From positions 140,258 to 204,257 of the IMG/VR virus record IMGVR_UViG_3300044821_000131: a stretch of 64,000 nt of DNA; one strand, written 5' to 3'. Positions 34,980-64,000 of this stretch are shown here, piece after piece. Both the position numbers and the translations under genes were made by a program. The notes below the pieces were generated by a model. It saw only the letters and a program-made list of their open reading frames with translations. It had not been told where the DNA came from and ran no database searches. Numbering within the stretch: position 1 is the first letter of the stretch; each line of letters opens with the position of its first letter.

Positions 34980-35028
34980 AGCGGTATTCTGTGTTATAAG
35001 TATTTGAACAGGATATGTTTAGATATTG

Positions 35029-35125
35029 ACCTATTTGCCCTATTTTAACCTAGGGCAATTGGGTTAGTTCTTTGAGTGCTGCTGTCGGGTACGACTGACG
35101 GCAGCACTCAAGGAGTTACTTCCTT
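35029..35125 (+). other. Cluster of intergenic inverted repeats/hairpins
   Basis: ttgcccta/tagggcaa; 15-bp stem 35072-35086/35097-35111 with one G-U pair; aagga/tcctt. Confidence 0.6.
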
Positions 35126-35191
35126 GTCAACAAACCAACAAAACAAAAACAACGGCAACCGCGCGGCCGACAACAGTGCGATAGAAAACCT

Positions 35192-35398
35192 ATGGCTAAA
35201 GCTCAACAATCAAAATCGAGTAATCGTGCAACTGGCAAACACATAGTGAAGCAGGCGACTTCACCGCACTGGGTTGAACCCTGCAAATTACCCTCGTTAG
35301 CCGAAGACCTGTCAACACGGGTTTCGCTGTTCGAGTATGTAGTCGCCAACGTTCAAAACAGCTGCACATTAACCGGAATAGCAGGGTACAGCGAATAA
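35192..35398 (+). CDS. Small hypothetical protein
   Basis: 68 aa ORF following an A/C-rich leader. Confidence 0.4.
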   Translation: MAKAQQSKSSNRATGKHIVKQATSPHWVEPCKLPSLAEDLSTRVSLFEYVVANVQNSCTLTGIAGYSE

Positions 35399-58662: not shown

Positions 58663-59393
58663 GCCGGCTGAGCGTCTTGGTGGCCTGTGAAGAGAGCGGA
58701 ACGGTGCGGGACGCATTTATCGCCCGCGGCCACAATGCTTGGTCCTGTGACTTAAAGCCGTCACTGACGCCAGGACCACATCTGAAAAGTGACGTGGTGC
58801 GCTGGCTAACAGGACAGCCTAGACTTGTTTCAACACTGAAGCCAGTGCCATGGGACCTGCTTATCTGCCACCCTCCGTGCACGTATCTGTGCGGATCGGG
58901 CATGCATTGGACCACCCGCGGTCTGAGAGATCCAAAATTGACGTCCGACGCTATCGAGTTTGCTGAGACTTTGTGGAATTGCGGCATCGAAAAAATATGT
59001 CTGGAGAATCCGGTAGGCGTCCTCAGCACCCGGAGCAATCTGGGTAAGCCGTCCCAGATCATTCAACCTTACGAGTTCGGCGAAGATGCCAGCAAAAAGA
59101 CATGCCTGTGGCTGAAGAATCTTCCGATCTTGGAGTCAACCGAATATTTTGAGCCGAGGATGGTCTGCAAAGCTTGCGGTGGTCATAATGGCTATGCTGC
59201 GGCCTCCCGAGACGGATGTAGACATTGCGGAGCAGAAGCTGCGTTTTTAAGACCCAGGTGGTCCAATCAGACTGACAGCGGACAGAATAAACTTGGACCT
59301 TCGGCCAATCGAGCGGCAGCTCGAGCGCAGACCTATCGGGGAATAGCAAGAGCTATGGCGGAGCAGTGGTCGGAAGATTTAAAGAAAGTGTAG
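58659..59393 (+). CDS. Phage DNA cytosine-5 methyltransferase-like protein
   Basis: VLVACEESGTVRDAF, SCDL, DLLICHPPCTYL (catalytic PC), LENPVG, KKTCLWL. Confidence 0.75.
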   Translation: MSRLSVLVACEESGTVRDAFIARGHNAWSCDLKPSLTPGPHLKSDVVRWLTGQPRLVSTLKPVPWDLLICHPPCTYLCGSGMHWTTRGLRDPKLTSDAIEFAETLWNCGIEKICLENPVGVLSTRSNLGKPSQIIQPYEFGEDASKKTCLWLKNLPILESTEYFEPRMVCKACGGHNGYAAASRDGCRHCGAEAAFLRPRWSNQTDSGQNKLGPSANRAAARAQTYRGIARAMAEQWSEDLKKV

Positions 59394-59403
59394 AATAAAA
59401 TAA

Positions 59404-59432
59404 TTGACACAAAACAGCATCAGGATTAGTGT
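59404..59432 (+). promoter_or_regulatory. Sigma-70-type promoter for the helicase gene
   Basis: TTGACA-17 bp-TAGTGT with an A/T-rich upstream tract. Confidence 0.65.
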
Positions 59433-59440
59433 CAAAACTG

Positions 59441-59571
59441 TCCGGCGAAAATGTGGAGTAAACAGAAGCAGATCCAATCACGATTTTGGTCATCGTGCGA
59501 CGCTGCCTTGCCTCTGTCTTGCCACCTTTCGCCGGGGGATGATCTAGGATCCGCAGCCAACACGATGACCA
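59441..59571 (+). ncRNA. Candidate structured 5' leader with alternative folds
   Basis: Stem 59442-59450/59527-59535; apical hairpin 59479-59497; perfect 11-nt alternative partner at 59561-59571. Confidence 0.45.
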
Positions 59572-59583
59572 TTTTATTTTTGT

Positions 59584-61104
59584 ATGGGTAGTATTACACA
59601 AGACTTTAGACGGGCACCGTTGCCTCCAGATGCGTCCGAAGTACGAAAAGACCACACCGGTATAGAGCGGGAAATCTTCTTCGGCGCCGTAGCCTCCTAC
59701 AATTTTTACAAACTTGTCCGCAATAACGTTTGCCCATACGACGCAGAAAAAAGGACATGCCGACCCGATTTTAGCATCGAGCGCTATAACATCGCGTGGG
59801 CCTTCATTGTCGCGTACTGGCAACGTTTTGAGAATATAACACTTCAGCGCGATCTAAGCATTCCCACCGAGACGCTGTGTGCCTTCGTTATTGATTGTGC
59901 CAACCGTTCCGGCTTGGTCGTGGACGTAGCCAAACAGATCACCGACGAAATCGTCGAAGAAGTCGGCTACACGGCAAATCTTACCTACGAGTCCCTGAAA
60001 GCTCTGGCCGAGAGCTCCGCGTTCAACGAGTGGCTGGAGTCCAGGCTATTGTCGCAGGTTACGGGCACCATTGCGGCGCAGAAGAACTTGGGCTATCTGA
60101 CCATGGACACGTTGGAGGAAGCCGTGGCGAAGGCCCGGAGGGCCATTACACCGGTAAAGAATGACTATTTCGTCAACGGAGCCAACTTCCTCTTCGGTAA
60201 ACGGAAAATACGTCCCAGCGTTCCCATAACGGCATTCCCAAATCTGTCCCGCGCGCTGGGCGGCGGCCTGTTCTGGGGAGAAGCCACAATGGTAGCCGGA
60301 ATCAATGCCGGAGGAAAAACGATAGTTACCATGCAGCTTGCTCGAGACTTTGCCTATCAAAGTATTAATACTGTGGTATTTACTACAGAGCGTAAACCGG
60401 AGGAATTGTTTGTTCGTTCTGTGAGTGAGTTATTGAATGTGGATATAGGCCGTCTCATGACGGTTCCGGCAACGGTGAATCAGGAAGTGGAGATAAATTA
60501 CATTCCAGATTGGGTGTGGTCCCACCCGGGAGATGCTGCGCGCTTGGAGCGAATGTACGATGTCTACAGTCAGCATTTACTGTTCATTGATTGGAGTAAG
60601 GGTCAAGGCGCTACCATAAGCGAGAGTTTTGAACAGGTTATGCAGCAGATAGAACAAACCGGATGGATGCCACAAATAGTGATATTCGACTGGATAGGTG
60701 GAGGATTAGACGTTATCGAGAATAAGGACTGGCTTCGGATGTATTACCAGTCGGCCGCAGACTGCCTGATCAATCATAGCAAACGCACGAACCGACATGT
60801 GATCATGACGGCACAATTGAACAAGGAGAAGGTCAAGCCTAGTACTAACTTTGTGGATATGAGCATGTTATCGGAATGTTTGACGATGACTAACAACTTG
60901 ACCAATTTTATTGGTATTACGGCTAAGCGGGATCAGAATCTGAAACCGGGGGCTGCGACGGTGCAGAAGTTTCAGAATCTGTGTGCGGCCAAAGCGACGC
61001 ACGGGCCAGGTGGCATCATACCGGTGGAGGCACAGTTCAATGTACAAAGGTTTATGGAACGTAACGATGCGGCTGAGAAGATGTTGAAGACTGGGGGTGG
61101 TTAA
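59584..61104 (+). CDS. DnaB-like replicative helicase
   Basis: GEATMVAGINAGGKT Walker A, VVFTTE, VIFDWIG Walker B, MTAQLNK. Confidence 0.88.
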   Translation: MGSITQDFRRAPLPPDASEVRKDHTGIEREIFFGAVASYNFYKLVRNNVCPYDAEKRTCRPDFSIERYNIAWAFIVAYWQRFENITLQRDLSIPTETLCAFVIDCANRSGLVVDVAKQITDEIVEEVGYTANLTYESLKALAESSAFNEWLESRLLSQVTGTIAAQKNLGYLTMDTLEEAVAKARRAITPVKNDYFVNGANFLFGKRKIRPSVPITAFPNLSRALGGGLFWGEATMVAGINAGGKTIVTMQLARDFAYQSINTVVFTTERKPEELFVRSVSELLNVDIGRLMTVPATVNQEVEINYIPDWVWSHPGDAARLERMYDVYSQHLLFIDWSKGQGATISESFEQVMQQIEQTGWMPQIVIFDWIGGGLDVIENKDWLRMYYQSAADCLINHSKRTNRHVIMTAQLNKEKVKPSTNFVDMSMLSECLTMTNNLTNFIGITAKRDQNLKPGAATVQKFQNLCAAKATHGPGGIIPVEAQFNVQRFMERNDAAEKMLKTGGG

Positions 61105-61109
61105 AGAGG

Positions 61110-61141
61110 ACAGGCGCCACGGTGGGGGACCGGGCGCCTGT
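61110..61141 (+). terminator. GC-rich hairpin after the helicase gene, lacking a U-tract
   Basis: acaggcgcc-a-cggt/accg-ggcgcctgt stem with a 5-nt G loop. Confidence 0.4.
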
Positions 61142-61333
61142 GTCGAACGTTAGTTTGAGGACCAAAGGCGCGTCAAAATATTCGGTTATGTCAGACCGAA
61201 CTGGCGAGCACCAACAGTGTCAACGAGTCGCAAACCGGATTCGTGAACAAAATGATGACTAGCGCCATTCTGTCGCGTCAGTGTGAATATGTCGCTAGTG
61301 CGACAATTTGTCAACAGGAATTTAATACGAACG

Positions 61334-61380
61334 ATTTTTCGAAAAATAATTTGACAATGAAAATGAAGATGTCATAGTGA
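61334..61380 (+). promoter_or_regulatory. Perfect 14-bp palindrome plus sigma-70-type promoter
   Basis: atttttcgaaaaat (61334-61347) just upstream of TTGACA (61351), then TG-n-CATAGT / TAGTGA as -10. Confidence 0.6.
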
Positions 61381-61384
61381 TCTC

Positions 61385-61477
61385 GCTTTAGTAAAGTGAC
61401 AACATGAATTTTGTGCCGCCCTGTTGCGTGTAACACTTCTATGTTGTTGCGTTACTAAAGCCCGCAACAGGCGGCGC
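61385..61477 (+). ncRNA. Candidate structured 5' leader with alternative or pseudoknot pairing
   Basis: ~21-bp stem 61385-61405/61441-61461; loop segment 61413-61428 complementary to 61463-61477. Confidence 0.5.
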
Positions 61478-61519
61478 CCTTCTTCAATAAGGTCCACGCC
61501 GTCTTAATTTAATACAATT

Positions 61520-63025
61520 ATGATCGCCGCAATTCAAGACTTCGAGTCGACGCCCGCAACATGTCGCCAGCCAGACAAGGCTCTGCAACTGCCCCAATAT
61601 ATCATGCACGCGACCTTGCAGAGATGCTGTGACCTCCAAGGCCAAGCCACGACACAGGCATTGCACATCAGCTGCCATATCCAAGCATTCAGTAACATTG
61701 CCATACACGAGGTGGCGAAGTATGCCTGGGACCGGCGGCGCGCGGTGCGGGGGCATGGCCAACAGATGAAGCCGCGTCCGGATCGTAAGTACAGATTCAA
61801 ATTGTCCGGGGACGAAATGGCGGTCTATCGCTTCCTGATCAACGTCCATAAGCCGGACAGCCGGAACCACCTCAAGTTTCACAAGCGCTTCAATGTGTAT
61901 GGAAGTTTGGACATGACGTCGGAAGAAATTGCCCGGTATATAAAACTGGAAGTGTATTCTGTTCGCCGGGCCTTGGTGAAACTGGACGCCCTTTGGCTGC
62001 TGGATCGTGTCTTAATTGCGCTAAAGGCGGAGGATGGCCACTATGTGGGCAGCAAGACATTGCTGCATCTGAGGCTGGATCGCCACCTGCAAATGTTTCA
62101 TGAAATTAAGAAGAACCGGGGGGTAGTTACCCCCGAAGAGGATGAGCAAAATCAGGCAGCAAATATGCCGGTTTTTGATGCATCTGGAGATGATAATAAT
62201 GTCAGTTGTAATAATGATATTATGGACCCCTCCTCTTCTCGTTTGGATTCAATCGTCAAGAGTTCTGGGTCCGAAGAGGAAAAAGACAGCGCGGCGCCGC
62301 TGTGCGGCGACCCAAATCTTTTTCCAGAGGGAGTTTTGAAAATAGGGGATGCGACGTTCCAGAAGTTTACAAAGGCCATTGATGACGCATTTCCCGGGCA
62401 ACTCGAAACCCCGGAACAATTGAATCGACTTCGTTACTTGATCCTTCGGACTTCACCTAAAGACCGCATGCAATACGAGGATCTCTGTGCAGTGTTGGAA
62501 TACAACATGGCCAGTTCGGTGAAGAATCTTTTGGATTACTGGTGGGTCATTCTGCACGATCTTCGGGTTGAACAGCTTTCCGCCAAGGACGGTTACGACG
62601 CGGATCGTTATCTTAAAAATTGGAGCGCTGAGGCGTCGGAAGTTAATTTCATCGAGTCGATGAAGGACGCGGTGCAGTTTATCGCCTATCGTAGAATCTT
62701 GGAACCCGGATTAAAAACATACGACGCCGTTTTGGACAGTTACGGAAATCCATTTGGTGCCTTGGCCGCTTGTCTCGAATTGGGTTTGCACAAGAAAATC
62801 GATTACGCTTTTACTGACGAACGGCGTTTTAACCTGCTTATGGACTGGATCAAGGATCCCAGTCATGACTTCGAGTCGCTCATGTTTCGTCAGCATTATC
62901 CTTGGATAATGGAGCGTTTGGGTTTGCCGGAGGCGGATTGGAACACCAAGAAACGGCGGGTACGCAAGGCTTATGAACGGATGCTGAATCTTCGGGCACA
63001 TGCGTCGATATGGCCAAAAAATTAA
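61520..63025 (+). CDS. Putative replication initiator with winged HTH
   Basis: MTSEEIARYIKLEVYSVRRALVKLDALWLL HTH followed by an acidic linker; adjacent to the DnaB-like gene. Confidence 0.5.
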   Translation: MIAAIQDFESTPATCRQPDKALQLPQYIMHATLQRCCDLQGQATTQALHISCHIQAFSNIAIHEVAKYAWDRRRAVRGHGQQMKPRPDRKYRFKLSGDEMAVYRFLINVHKPDSRNHLKFHKRFNVYGSLDMTSEEIARYIKLEVYSVRRALVKLDALWLLDRVLIALKAEDGHYVGSKTLLHLRLDRHLQMFHEIKKNRGVVTPEEDEQNQAANMPVFDASGDDNNVSCNNDIMDPSSSRLDSIVKSSGSEEEKDSAAPLCGDPNLFPEGVLKIGDATFQKFTKAIDDAFPGQLETPEQLNRLRYLILRTSPKDRMQYEDLCAVLEYNMASSVKNLLDYWWVILHDLRVEQLSAKDGYDADRYLKNWSAEASEVNFIESMKDAVQFIAYRRILEPGLKTYDAVLDSYGNPFGALAACLELGLHKKIDYAFTDERRFNLLMDWIKDPSHDFESLMFRQHYPWIMERLGLPEADWNTKKRRVRKAYERMLNLRAHASIWPKN

Positions 63026-63342
63026 CAAGCAAATTACGTTTTCGCACGCGCAAGCATTTGGAGGAGGATTTGAACCACGGTATTTTCTTTCTCGGCCGAT
63101 CGAATGTAGAGTTCGAGTACACGGACGATTGGAGTGTAGTTTGGATATTGAGTCTGGGCGTGGTTAAGGAGTTTCGTCGGCAAGGTTTTGCCACGCAGCT
63201 TTTAACCGAAATATTTAAACGGATGCCAGAGAACGGCTACTTTAATCCCGGGTGGTTCGCTTGCAGTCGTCCGCTGAAATGTGGCTTGGTGCGTGTAATA
63301 ACGCGCCTGAGCCATAAATATAAAGTTAAAATCCATTGGTAA
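63010..63342 (+). CDS. GNAT acetyltransferase-like protein
   Basis: ILSLGVVKEFRRQGFATQLL acetyl-CoA binding motif A. Confidence 0.7.
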   Translation: MAKKLTSKLRFRTRKHLEEDLNHGIFFLGRSNVEFEYTDDWSVVWILSLGVVKEFRRQGFATQLLTEIFKRMPENGYFNPGWFACSRPLKCGLVRVITRLSHKYKVKIHW

Positions 63343-63357
63343 TTAAAAACTGAATTT

Positions 63358-63645
63358 ATGTCAAAAACTGAACGTTTTATTAAAAAATTTCCAAAGTCAG
63401 AAGAGAACGATAATTGCCTTGCTGATTACGCCTGTCCCAAGTGCGGTTCACGTGGTGATTTCGAGGTGGAGGTTTACATTGTCGTTACCATGAGTGATAT
63501 GGGTACTGAATCTGATGGCGGCGATTCTGAGTTTACTGGTCGATACATGAAATGTTGCGCGTGTGCCCATGAAGGCAAGTCGAAGGATTTTTGGCATTTT
63601 GGGCTGGATGACGGTCTAGCGTATAAACGGCAGAATGAAGATTAG
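63358..63645 (+). CDS. Small zinc-ribbon protein
   Basis: CPKCGS and CCAC. Confidence 0.55.
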   Translation: MSKTERFIKKFPKSEENDNCLADYACPKCGSRGDFEVEVYIVVTMSDMGTESDGGDSEFTGRYMKCCACAHEGKSKDFWHFGLDDGLAYKRQNED

Positions 63646-63649
63646 ATTT

Positions 63650-64000
63650 ATGAACCTATATCTAAAAGATTCAGACGGTAATTGGAAATTACACAGCTAC
63701 GAAACGTTATCCGATTTGGCCGGGGAGTTTGCCAAACGTAACATAAAAATCGGCAATCGCGTGGCGATCGGCAGTGACGTGACGATCGGCAATTTCGTGA
63801 AGATCGGCGATTACGTGACGATCGGCAATCGCGTGACGATCGGCAATTTCGTGAAGATCGGCGATTACGTGACGATCGGCGATTACGTGACGATCGGCAA
63901 TCGCGTGGCGATCGGCAATCGCGTGACGATCGGCAATGGCGTGACGATCGACAATTACGTGACGATCGGCGATGACGTGACGATCGGCAATCGCGTGACG
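63650..64000 (+). CDS. Left-handed beta-helix hexapeptide-repeat protein (truncated by window end)
   Basis: Not in the ORF track; reads MNLYLKDS... then IGNRVA IGSDVT IGNFVK IGDYVT... to the window end. Confidence 0.85.
   Translation, partial: MNLYLKDSDGNWKLHSYETLSDLAGEFAKRNIKIGNRVAIGSDVTIGNFVKIGDYVTIGNRVTIGNFVKIGDYVTIGDYVTIGNRVAIGNRVTIGNGVTIDNYVTIGDDVTIGNRVT
63749..64000 (+). repeat. 18-nt tandem repeat, 14 units in the window
   Basis: atcggc(a/g)at...gtg(acg/aag/gcg) units encoding hexapeptides. Confidence 0.9.

What the first reader, a model, noticed from the sequence alone, without database searches (positions are those of the whole stretch)
61334..61520. Second, analogously built leader RNA upstream of the initiator-like gene
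Seen: a perfect palindrome (atttttcgaaaaat) abuts TTGACA. From the predicted transcription start, gctttagtaa...acaacat (61385-61405) pairs with atgttgt...ttactaaagc (61441-61461) over ~21 bp with one mismatch and two G-U pairs. The 28-nt loop contains gtgccgccctgttgcg (61413-61428), complementary over ~15 bp with one bulge to cgcaacaggcggcgc (61463-61477). Only 1 nt links the two stems, so a classical H-pseudoknot is sterically unlikely and a switch is more plausible. The design matches the helicase leader (5' long hairpin whose loop pairs downstream) with no sequence identity. Inference: the two core replication genes share a post-transcriptional control logic, plus an operator possibly bound by the wHTH initiator itself.
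Basis: partly seen in the sequence, partly recalled or inferred. Interest (0 to 1): 0.65.

Follow-up and report, generated by a model that had tools for sequence, protein, structure and literature searches.

The report
Structured leader before phage initiator-like gene
The DNA just upstream of a jumbo phage's putative replication-initiator gene carries a promoter followed by two strong, mutually exclusive RNA helices that are far beyond chance. They look like a lineage-specific regulatory mRNA leader, but no relatives conserve it and its function is untested.

Summary
S1 (61385-61405 / 61441-61461, 21 bp) and S2 (61413-61428 / 61463-61477, 15 bp plus one bulge) exist as described. They are interleaved with a 1-nt linker, so they cannot coexist. 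None of 1000 dinucleotide shuffles reaches this pair. It is the strongest interleaved pair among 4082 windows of the 204-kb phage genome, and it is much weaker on the minus strand. That points to a plus-strand RNA. A good sigma-70-type promoter puts the start at about 61385.

I read it as a 135-nt 5' leader with a chain of exclusive helices (S1, S2, S3, S4) ending on the SD-less AUG. By default S1 and S3 form and the AUG is open.

Several limits apply:
- There is no Rfam match and no sequence homologue.
- The leader is absent from every homologous helicase/initiator locus found, all of them distant.
- The region also holds a repeated CGCAACA/TGTCAA motif set that fits a DNA-binding-site rival.
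- The palindrome is not statistically special and sits where an UP element would.
- The helicase leader shares the promoter type and an interleaved topology (4/1000 shuffles), but its overall fold is no better than shuffles.

Interest is moderate.

The parts
59584..61104 (+). DnaB-like replicative helicase gene (506 aa), upstream neighbour
   Evidence: Pfam DnaB_C and phrog_19; 16 homologues at 33-59% identity
61110..61141 (+). GC-rich hairpin just after the helicase stop (terminator-like, no U tract); position and stem conserved in relatives L004/L006/L007/L008
   Evidence: Folds; alignments
61203..61215 (+). 13-nt block of the intergenic backbone shared with relatives (12/13 identical to L006/L007)
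   Evidence: MAFFT alignments
61189..61401 (.). Cluster of six TGTCA(A) motifs (61189+, 61218+, 61309+, 61352-, 61370+, 61397-). The -35 hexamer is one of them read on the other strand
   Evidence: top-ranked TGTCAA density in the genome. ATGTCAA occurs twice in each of the L004/L006/L008 leaders
61319..61328 (+). First copy of the 10-nt direct repeat AATTTAATAC; the second copy is at 61506-61515. The two copies bracket the promoter-plus-hairpin module
   Evidence: Read; 8-mers counted twice. Chance expectation is about 0.1, so this is only suggestive
61334..61347 (.). Perfect 14-bp AT-rich palindrome at -51..-38 of the predicted start; most simply an UP-like element
   Evidence: single copy; 17 such palindromes genome-wide against 12.5 expected
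61351..61378 (+). Sigma-70-type promoter: TTGACA, 16 nt, CATAGT with TG at 61370-71; predicted start near 61385
   Evidence: 10/12. One of only three strict TTGACA..TAnnn[T/A] sites in intergenic DNA on the plus strand of this genome
61385..61461 (+). S1: 5'-terminal long hairpin (arms 61385-61405 and 61441-61461)
   Evidence: It forms as soon as 61450-61460 is transcribed (prefix folds)
61404..61433 (+). 9-codon mini-ORF (MNFVPPCCV) inside the S1 loop, covering S2a; significance unknown
   Evidence: Read
61413..61477 (+). S2: alternative helix (arms 61413-61428 and 61463-61477); excludes both S1 and S3
61469..61504 (+). S3: hairpin whose 5' arm overlaps S2b (61469-76 with 61497-61504); part of the MFE state
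61498..61527 (+). S4: weak AU-rich hairpin pairing across the AUG; predicted only when S3 is prevented (S2 state)
   Evidence: Constrained folds. P(unpaired) of the AUG is 0.66 in the S1 state and 0.36 in the S2 state
61520..63025 (+). 501-aa initiator-like gene: wHTH N-domain (about aa 30-200), disordered linker (203-275), helical C-domain; no SD sequence
59404..59583 (+). Helicase leader: promoter of the same make (TTGACA 59404, TAGTGT 59427) and two crossing perfect helices (59443-51/59528-36; 59488-98/59562-72)

Best explanation
61385-61519 is the 5' untranslated leader of the initiator-like gene's own mRNA. It is made from a sigma-70-type promoter (61351-61378) with an AT-rich UP-like tract upstream. 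The leader holds a chain of four mutually exclusive helices. S1 excludes S2 by topology. S2 excludes S3 because they share 61469-77. S3 excludes S4 because they share 61498-61504. S4 pairs across the AUG. During transcription S1 closes first and is also the thermodynamic ground state, so the default is S1 plus S3 with an open, AU-rich, SD-less start region, which allows translation. Anything that removes or occupies the 5' arm of S1 would let S2 form, dissolve S3 and let S4 partly cover the AUG, lowering translation. Candidates for that trigger are 5'-end processing, cleavage of the 21-24-bp stem by a double-strand RNase, a trans-acting RNA or protein, or a different upstream 5' end on read-through transcripts. 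What is shown: the helices, their exclusivity, their statistics and the strand bias. What is inferred: the transcription start, the regulatory output and the trigger.
For: The helices and energies are. The z-score is -4.9. The interleaved pair is reached by 0/1000 shuffles, and the single helix S2 by 0/1000. It ranks 1/4082 genome-wide and lies in AT-richer intergenic DNA, whereas the other top windows are GC-rich coding sequence. All three transition-type non-Watson-Crick positions are G.U on the plus strand, which is why the minus-strand score drops to -10.7. The promoter scores 10/12 with an extended -10, and S1 begins at the predicted +1. The helicase gene has the same promoter type. Constrained ensembles put the S2 state 5.2 kcal/mol above the S1 state, with the AUG unpaired probability falling from 0.66 to 0.36. 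The phage almost never uses SD sequences (28/266 ORFs), so start-site accessibility is a plausible control point. From established knowledge, initiator genes of plasmids are classically controlled through alternative leader structures (summarised in PMC8053102 and PMC5703833).
Against: No covariation test is possible. The leader has no homologue in IMG/VR, metagenome or genome collections by pattern search, and there is no Rfam hit. Homologous helicase-initiator loci (L003, L004, L006, L007, L008) and the closest initiator relative (L012) have no crossing helices at all. Other relatives have upstream gaps that are too short. S2 is 5 kcal/mol less favourable and kinetically disfavoured, so no trigger is evident. 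S4 is weak and the predicted change in AUG accessibility is modest. No antisense promoter was found.
Confidence: 0.4

Rival explanations
1. Static RNA element. S1 is simply a 5'-terminal stabilising hairpin and/or a double-strand-RNase (RNase III-type) processing site of the kind that separates or matures phage early mRNAs. S2 complementarity is not used as a switch.
For: S1 starts at the predicted +1 with no 5' overhang and is 21 bp, or 24 bp with the MFE extension, about two helical turns. It forms first and is the ground state. From established knowledge, 5'-terminal stem-loops protect mRNAs from 5'-end-dependent decay, and T7 and lambda use long leader hairpins as RNase III sites.
Against: It leaves a 15-bp, -27 kcal/mol complementarity unexplained; that helix is itself beyond all 1000 shuffles. 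It also leaves unexplained the precise overlap of S2b with S3. The host and its RNases are unknown.
Confidence: 0.2
2. DNA-level element. The arms are binding sites for the wHTH initiator or another phage protein, forming an operator array or replication origin beside an AT-rich stretch. The RNA helices are a by-product of inverted site orientation.
For: The 7-mer CGCAACA occurs 29 times in 204 kb but 4 times within 61422-61561. CAACA cores in the four arms lie about 20-23 bp apart (read). A GTCAACA core sits right before the start codon of the homologous gene in L004, L006 and L008. TGTCA(A) motifs are clustered at 61189-61401 and in relatives' leaders. The flanking DNA is AT-rich (GC 0.35 in 61299-61438). 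From established knowledge, phage and plasmid origins often lie in or beside the initiator gene.
Against: The repeats form two unrelated classes, each present as one inverted pair 50-56 bp apart centre to centre, rather than a series of like-oriented iterons. Complementarity extends well beyond the shared core; for example, the outer 10 bp of S1 are perfect and lack the core. The strand bias from G.U pairs is unexpected for duplex-DNA sites. GC skew gives no origin signal anywhere.
Confidence: 0.15
3. Non-functional by-product. A recently inserted or duplicated promoter cassette has crossing inverted repeats that arose by template switching or duplication and have not yet decayed.
For: The intergenic region is 415 nt, against 160-208 nt in homologous loci. 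The conserved backbone of relatives aligns to 61095-61330, and the promoter-plus-hairpin block has no counterpart in them. The block is bracketed by a 10-nt direct repeat (61319 and 61506). Relatives show no conservation.
Against: Two independent long helices, a promoter placed so that S1 starts at +1, and the S2/S3/S4 overlaps reaching the AUG are a lot of coincidence. The alignment boundary is ambiguous (offers an alternative placement). A 10-nt repeat has a chance expectation of about 0.1.
Confidence: 0.12
4. Transcription attenuator. S3 followed by the U/A-rich tail acts as a terminator just before the gene. S2 is the antiterminator and S1 the anti-antiterminator, so the default is OFF, possibly read out through the 9-codon mini-ORF that covers S2a.
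For: The S1/S2/S3 exclusivity is the classical three-helix attenuator layout. S3 has an 8-bp GC-rich outer stem ending 16 nt before the AUG, followed by 5 U in 9 nt. The mini-ORF at 61404-61433 has Pro-Pro and Cys-Cys codons.
Against: The terminator scan did not flag S3, and terminator-like sites in the region are at shuffle level. The U tract is poor. A default-OFF leader behind a strong promoter needs a trigger that is not visible. The mini-ORF start is buried in the top of S1.
Confidence: 0.08

Closest known systems
I-complex plasmid (IncI-alpha ColIb-P9, IncB pMU720) repZ/repA leader
   Same: A replication-initiator mRNA leader in which the loop of a 5' stem-loop is complementary to a downstream leader segment, so initiator synthesis depends on RNA conformation (as summarised in PMC8053102, citing Asano and Mizobuchi 1998 and Praszkier and Pittard 2002).
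   Different: In those plasmids the loop-downstream pairing is short, forms a true pseudoknot next to the RBS and activates translation. It is blocked by an antisense RNA and coupled to a leader peptide. Here the pairing is 15 bp, cannot coexist with the hairpin (1-nt linker) and lies 43 nt from the AUG. No antisense promoter was found, the mini-ORF is not adjacent to the gene, and there is no sequence similarity.
pT181 / pIP501-type antisense-driven attenuation of rep mRNA
   Same: The rep leader has mutually exclusive helices, one of which precedes the rep start codon as a terminator-like hairpin (PMC5703833).
   Different: Those systems need a countertranscript and a bona fide terminator. 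Neither is evident here.
Long leader hairpins of phage early mRNAs (T7 RNase III sites, lambda N leader) and 5'-terminal stabiliser stem-loops (ompA type)
   Same: A stem of about 20 bp or more lies at or near the 5' end of a phage early-type transcript.
   Different: Those act as static processing or stability elements. The extra S2/S3/S4 exclusivity seen here is not part of them. This resemblance is recalled from general knowledge and was not tested.
PeSL promoter/stem-loop cassettes of T4-type phages (PMC2839356, PMC4122927)
   Same: A compact composite of an early sigma-70-type promoter and a stem-loop in intergenic DNA, associated with indels between related genomes.
   Different: PeSLs are repeated many times per genome and pair a terminator with a promoter. 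This module is single-copy and its hairpins lie downstream of the promoter.

Membership tests
Any Rfam family | Score at or above the family's gathering threshold | tested here: not met
   0 hits in the whole window at gathering thresholds. The only sub-threshold hit in 59300-61700 is a chance snoRNA match, E = 0.76.
I-complex rep leader (pseudoknot activator) | Hairpin-loop to downstream pairing that can coexist with the hairpin and lies next to the rep translation start | tested here: not met
   The linker is 1 nt after a 21-bp stem, and S2b ends 43 nt before the AUG.
I-complex rep leader (pseudoknot activator) | Antisense RNA gene on the opposite strand overlapping the stem-loop | tested here: not met
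   No minus-strand promoter-like site to the right of 61461 at 9/12 or better. The host promoter type is unknown, so this negative is soft.
I-complex rep leader (pseudoknot activator) | Leader peptide translationally coupled to the rep gene | tested here: not met
   The only mini-ORF (61404-61433) stops 86 nt before the AUG.
pT181/pIP501 attenuator | Mutually exclusive leader helices | tested here: met
   S1/S2/S3 exclusivity.
pT181/pIP501 attenuator | Intrinsic terminator (stable stem plus U tract) immediately upstream of rep | tested here: inconclusive
   S3 has a GC-rich 8-bp outer stem but a 20-nt interior and a poor U tract. It was not flagged by the scan.
PeSL cassette | Many near-identical copies per genome | tested here: not met
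   Single copy in the 204-kb genome.
Iteron-type origin or operator | Three or more like-oriented repeats of one 17-22-bp unit at regular spacing | tested here: not met
   Only a 7-nt core recurs, 4 times. The long repeats are two different inverted pairs.
Iteron-type origin or operator | Binding by the cognate initiator | not testable with these tools
   Needs EMSA or footprinting.
UP element (for the palindrome) | AT-rich T-tract/A-tract at about -60 to -38 of a sigma-70 promoter | tested here: met
   61334-61347 corresponds to -51..-38 of the predicted start. The function itself was not tested.
Double-strand-RNase (RNase III-type) site | About two turns (20 bp or more) of near-continuous duplex | tested here: met
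   21 bp plus a 3-bp extension. Cleavage is not testable here.
Winged-helix replication initiator (for the 501-aa protein) | wHTH DNA-binding domain | tested here: met
   AF2 model with helices 134-141 and 145-157 and a beta wing at 161-184, pLDDT 80-89 there. Foldseek gives weak matches, E 0.02-0.1, to winged-helix regulators and the RepA N-domain.
Winged-helix replication initiator (for the 501-aa protein) | Membership of a curated initiator family | tested here: not met
   No Pfam or PHROG hit. Only weak HTH hits in relatives. The PDB profile search found nothing.

The most novel reading that the evidence does not exclude
The two adjacent core replication genes of this jumbo phage (helicase and initiator-like protein) each acquired a sigma-70-type promoter cassette. 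Each cassette's 5' leader carries crossing, mutually exclusive helices. Together they would form a small phage 'replication regulon' in which one trans-acting factor or one RNase flips both SD-less mRNAs between open and closed start sites. This would be a family of cis-regulatory phage leaders with no described counterpart.
Probability: 0.1. Interest if true: 0.6.

Novelty: new member of a known kind. Interest (0 to 1): 0.38.

Why it matters
Very little is known about how uncultivated jumbo phages time and dose their replication proteins. If the leader is a working toggle, it would be a phage example of the RNA-conformation control long known for plasmid initiators, acting on an mRNA without a Shine-Dalgarno sequence. 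It would also give a compact, testable two-state RNA module. If it is instead a binding-site array, it marks the likely origin or operator of an orphan initiator family. Either result would annotate an otherwise opaque replication module. As it stands, it is a single-genome prediction.

Tried and rejected
- Rfam at gathering thresholds on the whole window and at permissive thresholds on 59300-61700: nothing.
- BLASTN of 59400-63100 against 50,697 phage records: no match.
- Pattern scans for both S2 arms in IMG/VR, metagenome contigs and GTDB genomes: 0 hits. A scan for the outer S1 arms gave 3 hits, which is about the number expected by chance, and inspection showed no further similarity.
- The initiator protein found only itself in the word search and nothing in IMG/VR. 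The exhaustive HMMER search found 11 distant relatives.
- Contexts of the relatives and of helicase homologues were read. None has a comparable leader.
- Apparent similarity of the proximal leader to L012 (a shared GGCGGCGC at the same distance from the ATG) was too short to use.
- A covariance model was not built because there is nothing to align.
- MITE or transposon reading: no terminal inverted repeats and a single copy.
- tRNA or tmRNA: none in the window.
- Origin mapping by GC skew: the skew rises monotonically, with no signal.
- A first genome-wide fold scan timed out. The second scan showed the window-level MFE here is only a moderate outlier (z about -2), so the claim rests on the specific helices and not on bulk stability.
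Full report
**Context.** The window is the last 64 kb of a 204,257-bp IMG/VR virus record. Its 'terminal repeat' is only 61 bp, so the record may simply be a circular assembly. The finding lies in the 415-nt gap between two genes. Upstream is a DnaB-like helicase gene (59584-61104; Pfam DnaB_C, phrog_19). Downstream is a 501-aa ORF (61520-63025) with no Pfam or PHROG match.

**The 501-aa protein.** It has only 11 distant relatives among 1.84 billion representatives. An AlphaFold model built on those relatives has mean pLDDT 70.6. It shows a winged helix-turn-helix in the N-domain (helices 134-141 and 145-157, wing 161-184), a disordered linker (203-275) and a helical C-domain. Foldseek gives only weak matches (E 0.02-0.1), to MarR/TFE-type winged helices and to the N-domain of staphylococcal RepA initiators. 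'Initiator-like wHTH protein' is therefore a fair label, supported by fold and by position next to the helicase, but not by family membership.

**The observation.**
- The sequence contains S1 (61385-61405 with 61441-61461) and S2 (61413-61428 with 61463-61477) as described. Duplex energies are -23.4 and -27.0 kcal/mol.
- The four arms are interleaved, and S1b and S2b are separated by a single nucleotide. Both helices cannot form at once in any classical pseudoknot geometry.
- RNAfold of 61380-61525 gives -45.9 kcal/mol with z = -4.9.
- I scored the weaker of the best two crossing helices. The observed value is -24.4 kcal/mol, against a shuffle mean of -1.2 and a best shuffle of -13.1 in 1000 dinucleotide shuffles.
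- Across the whole genome, on both strands, this is the top-scoring 200-nt window of 4082.
- Among the top 14 windows, only this one and the helicase leader are intergenic. The rest are GC-rich coding sequence.
- On the minus strand the score falls to -10.7, because the three transition-type non-Watson-Crick positions are all G.U on the plus strand. This is modest evidence for a plus-strand single-stranded molecule, most simply RNA. With three sites, the one-sided chance is about 1 in 8. Single-stranded DNA cannot be excluded.

**Promoter and palindrome.** TTGACA (61351), 16 nt, then CATAGT with an upstream TG scores 10/12 and puts +1 at about 61385, the first base of S1. A strict search for TTGACA-N16-18-TAnnn[T/A] finds only three intergenic plus-strand sites in 204 kb. 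Two of them are this one and the site upstream of the helicase gene (59404), and both share an AATAAT tract and a TAGTG -10. The 14-bp palindrome (61334-61347) is real and single-copy. However, the genome has 17 perfect 14-bp palindromes against 12.5 expected. This one occupies -51 to -38, where AT-rich UP elements lie (general knowledge). I therefore do not favour the operator reading.

**How it might work.**
- Prefix folds show S1 closing as soon as its 3' arm emerges, before S2b exists.
- In the full leader the ground state is S1 plus a second hairpin S3 (61469-76 with 61497-61504). This leaves the AU-rich region around the AUG mostly unpaired.
- Forcing S2 costs 5.2 kcal/mol in ensemble free energy and destroys S3, because S2b and the 5' arm of S3 overlap. 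It releases 61498-61504 to pair across the AUG in a weak hairpin S4. The unpaired probability of the AUG falls from 0.66 to 0.36.
- Only 28 of 266 ORFs in this phage have an SD-like motif, so start-site accessibility is a reasonable point of control.
- The helices and their exclusivity are shown. The transcription start, the output and the trigger are inferred.

**Comparative evidence.**
- The helicase has homologues at 33-59% identity. In L003, L004, L006, L007 and L008 it is followed, after 160-208 nt, by a gene of similar length. A profile of the initiator family recognises the gene in L003, L004 and L006, so the gene pair is conserved.
- Those intergenic regions share a backbone with the window: the post-helicase hairpin, a 13-nt block (61203-61215), ATGTCAA motifs, and a GTCAACA core that sits just before the start codon in L004, L006 and L008.
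- They have no counterpart of the promoter-plus-hairpin block and no crossing helices at all.
- The closest initiator relative (L012, 45% identity over the N-domain) has an unstructured upstream region (z = +1.65). Other relatives have upstream gaps of 88 nt or less.
- The leader is thus lineage-specific. It may be an insertion bracketed by a 10-nt direct repeat (61319 and 61506), although an alternative alignment keeps this uncertain.
- No covariation test is possible. No sequence homologue exists in any collection searched, and Rfam is silent.

**The DNA-level rival.** CGCAACA occurs 29 times in the genome but four times in 61422-61561. CAACA cores in the four arms are about 20-23 bp apart. 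TGTCA(A) is clustered at 61189-61401 and in a second regulatory region of the genome, where it shares the 10-mer GATGTCATAG. These facts fit binding sites for a phage DNA-binding protein, perhaps the wHTH protein itself. Three points count against this as the explanation of S1 and S2. The long repeats are two unrelated inverted pairs rather than a set of like iterons. Their complementarity runs well beyond the shared core. They also show strand bias. The two readings are not exclusive.

**The helicase leader.** It has two perfect crossing helices, 59443-51/59528-36 and 59488-98/59562-72. The plus strand is reached by 4/1000 shuffles and the minus strand by 0/1000. However, the whole leader folds no better than shuffles (z -1.4 and -1.0). 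Its MFE pairs the 5' end with the U-rich stretch before the AUG instead of forming the proposed hairpin. The two leaders share no sequence apart from the promoter. 'Analogously built' is thus true for topology and promoter type only.

**Comparison with known systems.**
- The nearest functional analogues are the leaders of plasmid initiator mRNAs. One is the I-complex repZ/repA pseudoknot with antisense RNA and a leader peptide (PMC8053102, with the references cited there). The other is the pT181/pIP501 attenuators (PMC5703833). This leader shares with them the control of an initiator through alternative leader helices.
- It fails their defining features: a coexisting pseudoknot at the RBS, a countertranscript, translational coupling and a clear terminator.
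- PeSL cassettes of T4-type phages (PMC2839356, PMC4122927) resemble it as promoter/stem-loop composites linked to indels, but they are multi-copy.
- Static RNase III or stabiliser hairpins explain S1 but not S2.

**Verdict.** This is a real, statistically exceptional, plus-strand-biased pair of exclusive helices directly behind a good promoter and in front of an orphan initiator-like gene. It is most likely a lineage-specific regulatory mRNA leader, with confidence 0.4 for the toggle model. Interest is moderate.

Noticed in passing
window 34980-35195 (+): This intergenic stretch has three consecutive strong hairpins, including a near-perfect 20-bp stem, followed by a CA-rich tail containing TTGTCAACA. 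It has the most extreme fold in the whole genome (z = -7.3, 0/200 shuffles). There is no Rfam or tRNA match.
   Followed up: partly
window 61189-61401 and genome C1:33,960-34,260 (outside the window): TGTCA/TGACA motifs are clustered in two regulatory regions, 5-7 per 250 nt against 0.45 expected. The two regions share the 10-mer GATGTCATAG. The promoters' TTGACA hexamers are this motif read on the other strand, so some '-35 boxes' may double as protein-binding sites.
   Followed up: partly
window 61286-61314 (-): A minus-strand promoter-like site (TTGACA, 17 nt, CATATT; 10/12) points towards the post-helicase hairpin at 61110-61141. It could make a small RNA of about 170 nt, antisense to the intergenic backbone.
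   Followed up: no
window 61404-61433 (+): A nine-codon mini-ORF (MNFVPPCCV) lies in the S1 loop and exactly covers S2a. It has tandem Pro and tandem Cys codons, and its start codon is buried in the top of S1.
   Followed up: no
whole genome (G000): Only 28 of 266 heuristic ORFs have an SD-like motif upstream, and position -1 is T in 48% of starts. The host probably initiates translation without SD pairing. The host was not identified.
   Followed up: partly
window 63635-64000 (+), runs off the end: This ORF is made of many short V/I-T-I-G-N/D-type repeats, typical of a beta-helix or fibre-like protein. The record's terminal repeat is only 61 bp, so the ORF may continue at the start of the record.
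   Followed up: no
relatives P0004 and P0012 (helicase homologues): Two homologous helicases are 657 and 839 aa long and carry a Hint/homing-endonuclease domain (PF05203). They appear to be intein-containing versions of the same helicase.
   Followed up: no
L005:2039-3563: In one relative, the 1.5 kb after the helicase gene has no called gene and only short ORFs. In the other relatives the initiator-like gene sits at this position. The gene may be degraded, or read in another frame or code.
   Followed up: no
window 61110-61141 and the equivalent sites in L004, L006, L007 and L008: The hairpin right after the helicase stop codon is conserved in position. Its stem sequences differ compatibly between loci and it lacks a U tract. 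It is a better candidate for covariation analysis than the leader itself.
   Followed up: partly
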